A stretch of DNA of 64,000 nt from positions 1,032,505-1,096,504 of the forward strand of contig NW_004797350.1 of NCBI RefSeq assembly GCF_000002075.1. The letters are read 5' to 3'. The notes beneath the pieces were generated by a model. The model ran no database searches. It was given only the letters and a program-made list of their open reading frames with translations, and was not told the origin of the DNA. The position numbers and the translations under genes were made by a program. This DNA comes from Aplysia californica (Eukaryota). Of this stretch, positions 34,631 through 38,119 are shown piece after piece; position 1 is the first letter of the stretch, and each line of letters opens with the position of its first letter.

Positions 34631-34925
34631 GTGCGGTCTTCCATCATGTCCAGGTAGGCATAATAGATCTAGATCTAGTTCTAGATCTAGAATCTAGATC
34701 TAATCTGGAATCTAGATCTAGATCTAGATCTAGATCTAATCTAGATCTCTAGAATCTAGATCTAGATCTAGAAAATCCGAAATGTTACCGAAAACACGTC
34801 GTTCCATGTTTGGGTATCCCAGGAAGTGATGACATCACATTACTAAAATAAGCAGCCAATCAGAAAGATGCGTCATCGAGTTTAACGGCATGTGGCTACA
34901 GTTGTAATGGAACGTCTGTTCACGG

Positions 34926-34971
34926 CACAGAATTCTACAATTTTTCTGTGATCACAGTGTAGCATTCTGTG
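34926..34971. mobile_element. CACAGAATTCT palindromic footprint/mini-element, 46 bp
   Basis: Flanks gttcacgg / gtttaggg (6 of 8 match). Confidence 0.6.
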
Positions 34972-35672
34972 GTTTAGGGTGAACGCAAAATTTGGTGAAC
35001 GCGCACCGGGTGAGAATAGCCACAAAACTCGCCTGCACTATTCTCACTCTGGGTGAGAATAGAGGTGGCCTTTGACGAGCAGGATCCAGCCCTACTCTGC
35101 GGAACTTCTTCTTCTAATGTAGGCGTAGATCTAGATTCTAGGTCTCAAAAGATGAACAATACAATTTTGCAGACAACATGTAATAACTACATGCTTGTTC
35201 TACATGGTGCTGCTCTAGGCATTATTTATTATTAAAAAACGAAGCCTTCCGTTGTTGGTTGTTTACCTTCGGATGCAGCCATTTTGAAATCGCCGCTGTT
35301 GTCAGTATGCCAGAGAATTTCGTTTTAACTTGCCAAATTTCCCATTACTAACTTGCTTGAGTGAACAGTTCCATTGAAAAGGTTTTGCGAAGCTTTAAAG
35401 TTATAGAATAATGTCTTTTGTATACATTCATGCTAAAAATTTAGCTTTTAAAAAAAATTCATCTTCTATCATCATATACCTGATTAAAAACTTAAAAGGT
35501 GCAGATGTACCCTCCCTTCCACCCATTTTTTGTTGTTGTGCAAAATTCAACACTGGCAAGTTAAAAGAGCTCTCCCCAGATCAAATGCGTCTTTTCCAAT
35601 TTTCGTCGGTAATTTAGGCCTATTGTACATCGGCCTATTGGCTTGTGGCAATTTTAGGTTTTGCCTCGCAAC

Positions 35673-35686
35673 CACAGAATTCTGTG
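35673..35686. mobile_element. CACAGAATTCTGTG footprint, 14 bp
   Basis: Flanks ctcgcaac / ctcacaac (7 of 8 match; CpG-type change). Confidence 0.7.
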
Positions 35687-35859
35687 CTCACAACACTTGT
35701 CACCCAAAATGCTTGAAAAGAGGGACTAAATTCAGTTTAAATTCTTAACTTTAACCCTTTTTTACTGTTCCGGTTATTTGAGCGCTGAAAATCTGAACTA
35801 TTTATTATACATGCCCAATACAGTTATCTTTCAACACAGGAGAATTTAAAATTATTTAA

Positions 35860-36586
35860 ATGTGAAATAAAAGACAGTCCAACATCGTCTTTATAGACCA
35901 GGAGAAGGTTTTAGACAGAGTAAACAATGCAAAACTCTGGAAGACACTCGAAAAGTGTGGCCTCAAAGGAAAAATGTTTGATAATGTTAGTGCTCTATAT
36001 ACCAACAGCAGAAGCTCAGTAAGAACGAAGGAAGGCAATACACTTCAAAGTGAGATTTGGAGTACGGCAGGGATGCGTTCTATCTCCCCTCCTGTTTATA
36101 ATAATAATATATTTAAAAATGGTCACAATTAACGCAAGACACAAACTAAAGCCCAGAAAACTTAAATGAATTTCTGTTCGCAGACAACCAATGTCTAATT
36201 CATCATGACCAACAAAGCCTCCAAAATCACACTACCGAACTCAACAACATCACTAGACGAGACAGGCAGAAAAATGAAGAAGTAAGAGCAGCTATCAGCA
36301 CTGAGTCCTGCCTGTGTTACATAGAAATACAGAAAATAAAATGGTTTGGCCACCTGTTACGCATGTCACCTGACCATCCAGCCTCGAGAGCCTACAACAC
36401 CAGGCACTCAGGCTATAAAGGAAGAGGAAGGCCACGCAAAAGGGGGATCGAGGGTGTCAAGGAAACTCTAAGAAAACATAACATCACAACTGAAAGAGCT
36501 GCGGAGCTGGCCTACCATAGAAAACTGCATCTCCCCTCGACGCTTAACGGCAGCAGAGGATGAAAAAGTAAAAGTAAGTAAAGTAA
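35860..36586 (+). mobile_element. Decayed, internally deleted RTE-type LINE (RT fragments and 3' end)
   Basis: LWKTLEKCGLKGK; GVRQGCVLSPLLF; KWFGHLLRM...GRGRPRKR; (AAAGT)n tail. Confidence 0.85.
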
Positions 36587-37264
36587 CAAAAGACGTTCAA
36601 AATCAAAATACATGTGCAAGCTTACACAAGTATACAAGCACTCAAGAAGCATTACATGAAATACACGAAGAAGAGGTGCGCTCCTACAACATGTGCATAT
36701 TATGTGTGCATTGTGTATTCGATCACTGATTGCATAATATGACTCTCGAATTGAACCTTCGATTGATGGTCTAGCTCTGTCTCTATGTCTGTAGTCTGAA
36801 TTTAGCTTGTGCTCTTCCTAAAATTATTTTTATTGGAGAGCACTCAACGTGCAGTTTCCTCACTAATGCCTTATTTGATTTTTAAATTTTTCGTTCCAAG
36901 AAATTCCTACCTGCTCTCTAAGAAATCACATTTCTGATGCTTCGACGGTTTTATGTTCACTGTTGTTGGTAATTGCCCAGCATTCACAGCCGTACAGAAG
37001 GGTTCACTATTGATCTTTTAATTTTGATAGCCTAATTGAGGCGTTTCTTTTTCATCGTGGGCTCATTTTTATTGAAACTACTGTCAAACACGGGTAACTC
37101 GAATTCGTCGGGGATAGGTTATAGTGTTCGAGATTTCCGTAATTCGTCACGTCCGTGGGAGCCCCAGATACAAAGAAATAGGGAGACAATCAAGGGAAGT
37201 TTTTTTAAAAGAACATTAACACAATTGATGTGTTTGGCTCCCATGATGAAAGCGTTGACGGTGT

Positions 37265-37503
37265 AAAAAATGGTATGGGACCAACGCCCCTATCAACACT
37301 ATTAGGTTATATAAGGGGCGGGACCTCCTAGTTTAACGTCCATCTCCGATAGGACCGAGCCAGATACAACGTCGGACCGAGCTGAGGCTCGAACACAGAA
37401 TTCTACACTTAAGTGTTAGAATTCTGTGGGCTCGAACCCCCGAATCCGCAATCTCACGATTAGGAGTCCGGTAGCCTAACCATTAGGCTACCGACGCCAC
37501 CGA
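37265..37503 (-). mobile_element. tRNA-derived SINE (third family) carrying a palindromic footprint at its B box
   Basis: TSD ttgacggtgt at 37255-37264 and 37504-37513; A box ggtagcctaatggtta; B box ggttcgagcc. Confidence 0.8.
37394..37428. mobile_element. CACAGAATTCT palindromic footprint, 35 bp
   Basis: Perfect 8-bp duplication ggctcgaa. Confidence 0.85.
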
Positions 37504-37670
37504 TTGACGGTGTGAAAAAAAGAAGGTGAATGAAAGTAGAAAGAAGAAAATCTCACGTGTGAACAGCCGACTCCAACTTCATTCCTTTTGTCTCTTTTCA
37601 GTGGCTTACAGAAAGTTACGTCCGTGCCATCCGCACCGCAGCGTCGCACAGCATAATATTAATTGCACAC

Positions 37671-37703
37671 CACAGAATTCTACACTTGTTTTAGAATTCT
37701 GTG
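37671..37703. mobile_element. CACAGAATTCT palindromic footprint, 33 bp
   Basis: Perfect 8-bp duplication ttgcacac. Confidence 0.85.
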
Positions 37704-37742
37704 TTGCACACTAGGCACGCGTGGCGAGCGGTGCGATCAGCA

Positions 37743-37774
37743 CACAGAATTCTACACTTGTGTAGAATTCTGCG
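37743..37774. mobile_element. CACAGAATTCT palindromic footprint, 32 bp
   Basis: Flanks gatcagca / ggtcagca (7 of 8 match). Confidence 0.85.
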
Positions 37775-38119
37775 GGTCAGCATCACTCCCCAACCCCCCT
37801 TCCCTGACCCCACCCTCCCCTTTCCTACAGCCTTTCGTGGTGAGACAGGGACCACGTTTTGACTGTAACAATGATAAAGAAACACCTACTCGCGGTTAGA
37901 AAAGGCTGTAATTAAAGCCATGTCTTTAGTTGAGGATGCAAAGTGGATTTGTTCAAGGTTCGAATGTTGCCGCCCGTTGTTCGGGAACAAAGAAAACAGG
38001 GACTGAAACGGGATCGAGCGTTATATTCGAGATTATACCCGAGATTTGTGATTAACGTGTTTAAATTTCGTGGACTTTACTGCACGTGCTACCTTTATTT
38101 AATTGTCATTACAGTTCCT

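What the first reader, a model, noticed from the sequence alone, without database searches (positions are those of the whole stretch)
34918..37782. Five ultra-short palindromes with 8-bp target duplications: probable P-element-type excision footprints in a hotspot
Seen: inserts of 46, 14, 35, 33 and 32 bp with consensus CACAGAATTCTACAC-n-GTGTAGAATTCTGTG. Each is flanked by a different 8-bp duplication (2 perfect, 2 with one mismatch, 1 with two). Three lie within 400 bp, and one interrupts a SINE at its B box, showing it is an insertion. The centres differ while the outer ~15 bp are nearly constant. Established: Drosophila P transposase makes 8-bp TSDs and 17-nt staggered cuts, so end-joining leaves about 15-17 bp of each TIR, and P elements favour promoter regions and hop locally. 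Inference: footprints of an undescribed P-superfamily element with CACAG termini using the same long-overhang chemistry. The 14-bp form fits joining through the internal AGAATTCT palindrome. Alternative: one of the smallest mobile units known.
Basis: partly seen in the sequence, partly recalled or inferred. Interest (0 to 1): 0.82.

Follow-up and report, generated by a model that had tools for sequence, protein, structure and literature searches.

The report
P-type transposon excision scars, clustered
Four of the five tiny palindromes are repair scars left where a P-type cut-and-paste transposon jumped out. Hundreds more lie across this (sea-hare) genome, and together they record how such an enzyme cuts DNA outside insects. 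The fifth palindrome only rode in inside another repeat.

Summary
Four short CA...TG palindromes of 14, 35, 33 and 32 bp lie at 35673-37774, each between its own 8-bp duplication. An unbiased scan of the window finds such structures only here (reversed-sequence control 0).

The 46-bp item at 34926-34971 is not a local insertion. It is a fixed part of an abundant repeat ("family B").

Genome-wide counts:
- The 15-nt arm occurs 3843 times (control 0).
- 473 exact-arm palindromes exist, of which 251 are one 33-mer.
- The 14-mer occurs 113 times (control 0).
- Non-coding 2.7-3.4 kb elements carry the same 23-31 bp inverted ends and perfect 8-bp duplications.

Retained arms pile up at 18 nt. Centres show microhomology joins and filler.

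A second, verified P element of this genome leaves the same kind of 26-35 bp palindromes. It is 5.1 kb long and encodes an 892-codon frame (870 aa scanned) with THAP, HTH, RNase H and GTP-binding domains.

Best reading: these are excision footprints of P-type elements cut with a stagger of about 18 nt, made during local hopping. Two neighbouring scars share an arm variant found at only 6 genome sites.

Gaps: no transposase-coding copy with CACAG ends was found, and no long/short allele pair was seen.

The scan reached the same reading before on other DNA of this genome (s1-700934, s1-716524).

The parts
35673..35686 (.). 14-bp scar CACAGAATTCTGTG. The two ends are joined through the self-complementary AGAATTCT. 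Duplications lie at 35665-35672 (CTCGCAAC) and 35687-35694 (CTCACAAC).
   Evidence: The same 14-mer occurs at 113 genome sites against 0 for the reversed control. It is present in contigs of three samples (records 1, 10, 18).
37394..37428 (.). 35-bp scar inside a SINE B box. Perfect duplication GGCTCGAA at 37386-37393 and 37429-37436. The right arm carries a rare extra T.
   Evidence: SINE paralogues lack these 43 nt. The arm variant has 3 exact sites in the genome.
37671..37703 (.). 33-bp scar. Perfect duplication TTGCACAC at 37663-37670 and 37704-37711. The right arm carries the same rare extra-T variant plus one substitution.
   Evidence: CACAGAATTCTAANAC has only 6 sites in the genome, and two of them lie 275 bp apart here.
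37743..37774 (.). 32-bp scar made of 17 nt of one end plus 15 nt of the other. Duplications GATCAGCA at 37735-37742 and GGTCAGCA at 37775-37782.
34926..34971 (.). 46-bp palindrome with the same arms and an 18-nt centre. It is a fixed component of the multicopy repeat 'family B', not a local insertion.
   Evidence: The same 46-mer with the same flanks (CCCTAAAC / CCGTGAAC on the other strand) is found in more than 12 other loci. About half of the first 30 genome hits of the 15-mer are of this kind.
34894..35090 (-). Copy of the abundant repeat 'family B' that carries the 46-bp palindrome.
   Evidence: Alignment with L046 and L053. Contig depth over this stretch is very high (table 2).
37283..37505 (-). 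tRNA-derived SINE copy, split at its B box by the 35-bp scar.
   Evidence: tRNA-like head once the insert is removed; high depth; joints that skip 43 nt.

Best explanation
The 14-, 35-, 33- and 32-bp palindromes are donor-site scars. A non-autonomous cut-and-paste element inserted at each site and made an 8-bp duplication. Its inverted ends read CACAGAATTCTACACTTATAGAA, and 2.7-3.4 kb copies are still in the genome. A P-type transposase later cut the element out. It cleaved the 3' strand at the element tip and the 5' strand about 18 nt inside, so each flank kept an 18-nt 3' tail of end sequence. End joining of the two tails gives the observed forms:
- 34 bp from a 2-nt TA overlap;
- 33 bp from a 3-nt overlap with one mismatch, or from loss of one nucleotide;
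- 14 bp from annealing at AGAATTCT;
- longer forms carrying filler.

The cluster at 35.6-37.8 kb reflects local hopping or a preferred open, CpG-rich target region.

Shown: the structures, the duplications, the long elements, the cap on arm length, and the same behaviour in a verified P element. Inferred: the cleavage chemistry, the P-superfamily membership of the CACAG family, and the source of its transposase.
For: - Independent short palindromes have distinct 8-bp duplications, perfect or with one mismatch. Counting the family-B copies as well, 24 of 39 have at most one mismatch, and nearly all the non-family-B ones are perfect.
- Long elements share the 23-nt ends and have perfect 8-bp duplications in 6 of 6 cases.
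- There are 473 exact-arm palindromes. In the first 50 the lengths are 33 bp x29, 34 x10, 36 x4, 39 x4, and 32, 42 and 45 x1 each. 251 are the exact 33-mer, in either orientation at 132:119.
- Among the 20 scars held as DNA, the retained end sequence per arm is 18 nt for 17 arms, 16 nt for 13 and 17 nt for 4. Only one arm is longer.
- The microhomology product of 14 bp recurs 113 times against 0 for the control.
- L027 holds a one-sided scar: 17 nt of one end joined into the duplication through TT. An insertion cannot make this.
- Positive control: a 5.1-kb element with ends CATAGACCTATAATTA..., an 8-bp duplication, 99.5% identical copies and an 892-codon open frame. The 870 aa of it that were scanned carry THAP, HTH, RNase H-N, GTP-binding and RNase H-C domains. 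It has 12 palindromes of 26, 30, 34 and 35 bp made of about 17-18 nt of each end, against 21 other end hits.
- The ratio of scars to long copies is of the same order in both families: 12 to about 19, and at least 586 to roughly 580. The 580 is extrapolated.
- The duplication consensus is G1 T2 ... A7 C8 at 57% GC. This matches the core GTCCGGAC of the Drosophila P target motif (PMC2577343).
- A 17-nt stagger, 8-bp duplications and 31-bp ends are the marks of P elements (PMC7776569). Non-coding P relatives are known from Anopheles (PMC1562414).
Against: - No copy with CACAG ends encodes a transposase. The long copies have no long frames and no tblastn match to the genome's P transposases.
- The 12 best P-transposase loci lack the 15-mer within 1.5 kb. 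This test is weak, because in the control family the end lies about 2 kb from the matched domain.
- Half of the exact palindromes are one identical 33-mer, which amplification of a mobile unit could also give.
- No long/short allele pair was seen; the public runs gave contigs only.
- The duplication consensus also fits hAT elements (my memory).
Confidence: 0.85

Rival explanations
1. The 33-bp palindrome is itself a mobile unit: an ends-only mini-MITE, the smallest known. A transposase that needs only the outer 15-18 nt moves it. The other lengths are mutated copies.
For: - 251 of 473 exact-arm palindromes are one identical 33-mer.
- Every copy has its own 8-bp duplication.
- Items 3 and 4 of the window, 275 bp apart, share a rare arm variant, as a local hop of the unit itself would give.
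Against: - Length variants differ by insertions and deletions exactly at the centre, while the arms stay intact.
- The 14-mer (113 sites) and the 26- and 30-mers of the control family are the products predicted for microhomology joining of two tails.
- A one-sided scar exists.
- Two families with unrelated ends give the same arm cap and a similar ratio of scars to elements.
- Items 3 and 4 differ at the junction itself.
- Drosophila P transposase needs internal binding sites beyond the inverted repeat (PMC7776569).
Confidence: 0.07
2. The palindromes are extreme internal-deletion derivatives. They were made by interrupted copying from the sister chromatid after excision, not by direct joining of staggered tails.
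For: - A few forms keep more than 18 nt of one end: the 30-mer in L034 has 23 nt.
- The 46-mer in family B has a long centre.
- Internally deleted long copies of 0.9-1.3 kb exist.
Against: Interrupted copying should give a broad spread of retained lengths. Instead, arms pile up at 16-18 nt and only 1 of 40 is longer. None of the first 50 exact-arm palindromes keeps 19 or more.
Confidence: 0.05
3. The CACAG family belongs to the hAT superfamily (8-bp duplications, GT....AC target) and the palindromes have some other origin.
For: 8-bp duplications and the consensus G1 T2 ... A7 C8 also fit hAT elements such as Hermes (my memory).
Against: - hAT excision forms hairpins on the flanks and leaves no end remnants (established knowledge; PMC5499845 treats this chemistry).
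- The tip CACAG departs from the hAT tip pattern (my memory).
- The ends extend to about 31 bp.
- A verified P element in the same genome makes the same palindromes.
Confidence: 0.03

Closest known systems
Drosophila melanogaster P element and its excision footprints
   Same: 8-bp duplications, inverted ends of about 31 bp that start with CA, and a long staggered donor cut that leaves about 17 nt of each end at the empty site. Also a palindromic GC-rich target with core GTCCGGAC, and local hopping. Sources: PMC7776569 and PMC2577343; the footprint experiments are cited from my memory of Beall and Rio 1997 and Staveley et al. 1995.
   Different: The host is a mollusc and the end sequence is unrelated. 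The retained length is capped at 18 nt, not 17. Hundreds of scars are fixed in the reference genome rather than recovered in crosses or plasmid assays. No coding copy of the CACAG family has been found.
P-MITEs of Anopheles gambiae (PMC1562414)
   Same: Non-coding elements with P-type ends of 27-31 bp, perfect 8-bp duplications and an interior unrelated to any transposase. The 2.7-3.4 kb CACAG elements are built this way.
   Different: The CACAG elements are much longer and carry a 209-bp internal tandem array. That paper has no occurrence of 'footprint' or 'palindrom'.
Zebrafish Pdre2 / THAP9 (PMC10983969)
   Same: P-type elements outside insects, with 8-bp duplications and excision by a THAP9-type transposase.
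   Different: Pdre2 has 13-bp ends. According to that preprint, its excision products in cell assays show larger flanking deletions rather than neat end-to-end scars.
Classical MITEs
   Same: Short, non-coding, palindrome-like sequences flanked by duplications and present in many copies.
   Different: MITEs are usually 50-800 bp, and their copies differ by scattered point changes. Here the variation sits at the centre junction and the arms stop at the predicted cleavage position.

Membership tests
P superfamily DNA transposon (CACAG family) | 8-bp (7-8 bp) target-site duplication | tested here: met
   6 of 6 long copies and nearly all independent scars have perfect or one-mismatch 8-bp duplications.
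P superfamily DNA transposon (CACAG family) | Terminal inverted repeats of about 27-31 bp | tested here: met
   23 nt are identical at both ends. The match runs on to about 31 nt with two mismatches.
P superfamily DNA transposon (CACAG family) | Encodes, or is moved by, a transposase with THAP, RNase H and the GTP-binding insertion domain | tested here: inconclusive
   No coding copy with these ends was found. The genome does hold at least 27 matches to PF12017 and one intact full-architecture P transposase.
P superfamily DNA transposon (CACAG family) | Donor cleavage with a long (17-nt) stagger that leaves end remnants at the empty site | tested here: met
   Indirect evidence: scars keep up to 18 nt of each end with a sharp cap. 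The same pattern is seen for the verified P family. Cleavage was not measured directly.
P superfamily DNA transposon (CACAG family) | Palindromic GC-rich target motif (core GTCCGGAC in Drosophila) | tested here: met
   27 duplications: G at position 1 in 16, C at position 8 in 17, T2/A7 enriched, 57% GC against 39% background (PMC2577343). This does not discriminate against hAT.
hAT superfamily | Excision through flank hairpins, so that footprints lack end remnants | tested here: not met
   The empty sites keep 16-18 nt of each end.
MITE (a unit that is itself mobile) | Copies descend from one master and differ by scattered point changes; the unit itself is mobilised | tested here: inconclusive
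   The centre-restricted length variants, the recurrent 14-mer and a one-sided scar argue against this. Half of the copies are one identical 33-mer. Mobility cannot be tested with these tools.

The most novel reading that the evidence does not exclude
The 33-34 bp ends-only palindrome can itself be excised and re-inserted by the P transposase. That would make it the smallest eukaryotic mobile DNA known. The shared rare arm variant of two scars 275 bp apart would then record a hop of the palindrome, not of a long donor.
Probability: 0.07. Interest if true: 0.85.

Novelty: new member of a known kind. Interest (0 to 1): 0.5.

Why it matters
P-element cleavage with a 17-nt stagger has been measured only for the Drosophila enzyme. 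Here a mollusc genome keeps several hundred natural donor-site scars from at least two P families. They read out the cut position (about 18 nt) without any experiment. This argues that the unusual long-stagger chemistry is old and conserved.

The scars are also a ready catalogue of germline end-joining products in a lophotrochozoan: microhomology use, filler and one-sided deletions. Their clusters mark tracks of local hopping in CpG-rich, probably open chromatin.

For annotation, the scars explain a class of tiny hairpin-forming palindromes. One of them has been spread in thousands of copies inside another repeat.

Tried and rejected
- Chance: rejected by shuffles and reversed controls.
- Transposase inside the long CACAG copies: none. 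There are no long frames and no tblastn match to the P transposase frames of this genome.
- CACAG ends near the 12 best P-transposase loci: none within 1.5 kb. This test is weak, because the control family's end lies about 2 kb from the matched domain.
- Shared DNA between the long copies and the P loci: none.
- Subterminal similarity between the verified P family and the CACAG family (CACGTGAC, AATGGCG): not better than shuffles.
- Reads for a long/short allele pair: only contigs were served, and repeats dominate them.
- Earlier notes on a transposase with an array of about 215 nt (s1-682742): no link could be made.
- Joints of excised circles: rejected, because they would place the tips inward, not outward.
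I did not try to obtain those letters another way, so the flanks of the 12 control-family palindromes remain unread.
The computation was redone from the files.
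Full report
**The observation**

The 15-nt arm CACAGAATTCTACAC matches 7 times in the window with up to two mismatches, against 0.16 expected from shuffles.

I ran a scan that knows nothing of this motif. It looks for any CA...TG palindrome of 14-50 bp with arms of at least 10 nt (or fully paired) that lies between 8-bp direct repeats with at most one mismatch. 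It finds three hits in the 64 kb: the 14-, 35- and 33-bp items. It finds none in the reversed sequence. It misses the 32-bp item only because that item's last arm reads CTGCG.

The four items at 35673-37774 have different duplications:
- CTCGCAAC / CTCACAAC
- GGCTCGAA (perfect)
- TTGCACAC (perfect)
- GATCAGCA / GGTCAGCA

Three of them lie within 381 bp.

The 35-bp item splits a tRNA-derived SINE. Removing it with one duplication copy restores ...GGATTCGGGGGTTCGAGCCTCAGC..., that is, a B-box-like GGTTCGAGCC. Contigs of SINE paralogues in public runs skip exactly these 43 nt (joint 37385 to 37429).

**The 46-bp item is different**

Its flanks are not unique DNA. The same 46-mer, with the same neighbours, recurs in L001, L003, L004, L007, L008, L010, L013, L029, L030, L037, L046, L053 and others. 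On the other strand those neighbours read ...GCGTTCACCCTAAAC before it and CCGTGAACAAACG... after it.

About half of the first 30 genome hits of the 15-mer are of this kind. Contig depth over 34907-35120 is enormous.

Variants with CCGTGAAC or CCCTGAAC on both sides (L023, L010) suggest that an ancestral 8-bp duplication has since decayed. So this item is an old scar, or a deletion derivative, that became part of another repeat ("family B") and was copied with it. It says nothing about events at this locus.

**The family in the genome**

The window's assembly has 927,310,431 bases in 4332 pieces. Earlier notes of this scan call it a sea hare (Aplysia), which agrees with my memory of the size of that assembly.

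- The 15-mer occurs 3843 times; the reversed control occurs 0 times.
- Pairs of hits in inverted orientation bound elements of 2.7-3.4 kb (L047-L051, L054) and shorter derivatives (L052, 1.3 kb).
- Both ends read CACAGAATTCTACACTTATAGAA, 23 nt identical and continuing to about 31 nt with two mismatches.
- Six of six elements have perfect 8-bp duplications.
- These copies are 91-95% identical to one another and hold a 209-bp internal tandem array.
- They have no long reading frame.

They are therefore non-autonomous.

**The short forms**

With exact 15-nt arms and 0-30 nt between them there are 473 palindromes. Of these, 251 are the single 33-mer, in either orientation (132:119).

Among the first 50 listed, the lengths are:

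| Length (bp) | Count |
|---|---|
| 33 | 29 |
| 34 | 10 |
| 36 | 4 |
| 39 | 4 |
| 32, 42, 45 | 1 each |

The 14-mer CACAGAATTCTGTG occurs at 113 sites against 0 for the control, and about 3-4 would be expected from genome size.

In the loci I could read, independent short palindromes have their own 8-bp duplications, nearly all perfect.

For 20 such scars I measured the stretch of end sequence kept by each arm. It is 18 nt for 17 arms, 16 nt for 13 (the partner arm in the 33-mers) and 17 nt for 4. It exceeds 18 only once, in a 30-mer that joins 23 nt to 11 nt through AGAA.

In the filler-containing forms the filler is bracketed by 18 nt on most sides (for example 18 + 3 + 18 = 39). If the cut left 17 nt, the 18th base would match only by chance, in about a quarter to a third of cases. 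So the cap is 18 rather than 17.

The common products then follow from two identical 18-nt 3' tails ending in ...CTTA:
- A 2-nt TA overlap gives the perfect 34-mer.
- A 3-nt overlap with a central T:T mismatch, or loss of one base, gives the 33-mer.
- Annealing at the internal self-complementary AGAATTCT gives the 14-mer.

L027 holds a one-sided product: 17 nt of one end joined into the duplication through a TT microhomology. Imprecise excision makes such products; insertion cannot.

**A positive control from the same genome**

The genome has at least 27 matches to the P-transposase HTH domain PF12017. These fall into several lineages that share 30-58% of their residues.

For one lineage I compared two copies (L067 and L068, 99.5% identical) to find the element's edges:
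- It is 5.1 kb long.
- Its ends read CATAGACCTATAATTA(A/G)CCGAGACTGCGC.
- It has an 8-bp duplication, GACTGTAA.
- It has an 892-codon open frame. The 870 aa of it that were scanned carry THAP, HTH, RNase H N-terminal, GTP-binding insertion and RNase H C-terminal domains. That is a complete P transposase architecture.

Searching for its two tips facing each other gave 12 palindromes:
- three of 26 bp, joined at TAATTA;
- one of 30 bp, joined at TTAA;
- three of 34 bp;
- five of 35 bp (18 + 17 nt).

Only 21 other hits of the tip exist.

So a verified P element, with ends unrelated in sequence to CACAG apart from CAYAGA, leaves the same kind of scar with the same arm length. Its ratio of scars to elements (12 to about 19) is of the same order as for the CACAG family. 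For that family I count at least 586 scars (473 + 113) against roughly 580 long copies, the latter extrapolated from the classes.

This is the strongest argument that the palindromes are a by-product of P-type excision and not a special mobile lineage.

**Target sites and clustering**

Twenty-seven duplications give G at position 1 (16 of 27), C at position 8 (17 of 27), enriched T2 and A7, and 57% GC against 39% in the window. This matches the core GTCCGGAC of the 14-bp palindromic target motif of the Drosophila P element (PMC2577343). From memory, hAT elements such as Hermes have a similar preference, so this feature does not discriminate.

Scars are strongly clustered. The window holds four within 2.1 kb, whereas the genome-wide density is about one per megabase. 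Elsewhere, pairs lie 147 bp (C92), 148 bp (C30), 446 bp (C131) and 477 bp (C92) apart.

The cluster in the window lies in a domain with undepleted CpG (observed/expected 0.8-1.1 at 30-44 kb). I could not test nearness to a transcription start.

**A trace of local hopping**

The right arms of the 35-bp and 33-bp items carry an extra T (GTGTTAGAATTCTGTG and GTTTTAGAATTCTGTG). The pattern CACAGAATTCTAANAC has only six sites in the whole genome, and two of them are these, 275 bp apart and in the same orientation.

The two scars therefore descend from one donor lineage. They differ at the junction itself (...CTTAAGTGT... against ...CTTGTTT...). Two separate repairs after two excisions of the same element would give that difference. 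A copy of one palindrome from the other would need an extra deletion placed exactly at the centre.

**Public reads**

Only contigs were served, and repeats dominate them. Contigs of three samples contain the 14-bp scar. No alternative allele with a long element was seen.

A joint from 37543 to 37775, whose right edge is exactly the end of the 32-bp scar, appears in all four runs. Only 20 nt support it on one side, so I leave it unexplained.

**Comparison with what is known**

A 17-nt staggered donor cut, 8-bp duplications, 31-bp ends and hopping to nearby sites are the marks of the Drosophila P element (PMC7776569). Non-coding relatives with P ends and unrelated interiors are known from Anopheles (PMC1562414). 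P-type elements with 8-bp duplications exist in zebrafish (PMC10983969).

Footprints that keep about 14-18 nt of each end are classical results of Drosophila crosses and plasmid assays; I cite these from memory.

My three full-text searches found no report of natural, genome-wide P scars in a mollusc, nor of an 18-nt cap. That library is incomplete.

The scan itself reached the same reading before on other DNA of this genome (s1-700934, s1-716524). I arrived at it independently before seeing those notes, and I tested the 18-nt claim on my own loci.

**Verdict**

The main gap is that no coding copy with CACAG ends was found. Membership of that family in the P superfamily therefore rests on four things: the duplications, the end length, the target motif and, above all, the scar geometry it shares with a verified P element.

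I rate it a new member of a known kind, of moderate interest.

Noticed in passing
L067:2069-7169 and L068:1996-7170 (G000 C820 and C209): A 5.1-kb P element with an intact 892-codon transposase frame carrying all P domains. Its copies are 99.5% identical and it has an 8-bp duplication. It looks recently active, possibly still so.
   Followed up: partly
window 34894-35090; also L001-L030, L046, L053: A very abundant repeat ('family B') carries a fossil 46-bp CACAG palindrome at a fixed position. About half of all genome hits of the 15-mer come from it. In L053 two copies face each other about 900 bp apart.
   Followed up: partly
L054:1635-2649 (also L047-L051): The long non-coding CACAG elements hold an internal tandem array of a 209-bp unit, up to 5 copies.
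   Followed up: partly
L068:1997-2157 and 7010-7170; L048 element ends: AATGGCG, which resembles a YY1 site (my memory), lies 55-80 nt from the tip at both ends of the verified P element and of the CACAG element, and also in family B. CACGTGAC lies 32-43 nt from one tip of each. Local alignments are not better than shuffles.
   Followed up: partly
window 37543-37775: Contigs of all four public runs show a joint that skips 231 nt and ends exactly at the right edge of the 32-bp scar. Only 20 nt support it on one side. It may be a flanking-deletion allele or a repeat artefact.
   Followed up: no
window 34700-34772 and 35121-35145: (TAGATC)n / (CTAGAT)n arrays lie beside the scars. Other notes of the scan read them as footprints of a TA-targeting transposon (s1-765332, s1-697565).
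   Followed up: no
window 35870-36600: A fragment of a high-copy retrotransposon-like repeat, seen as very high contig depth, lies between the 14-bp scar and the SINE.
   Followed up: no
window 30000-44000: A domain with undepleted CpG (observed/expected 0.8-1.1) surrounds the scar cluster. The neighbouring gene bodies are at 0.3-0.5.
   Followed up: partly
G000, six sites listed: All six genome sites of the rare arm variant CACAGAATTCTAANAC are reported on the reverse strand of their contigs. This is probably chance.
   Followed up: no
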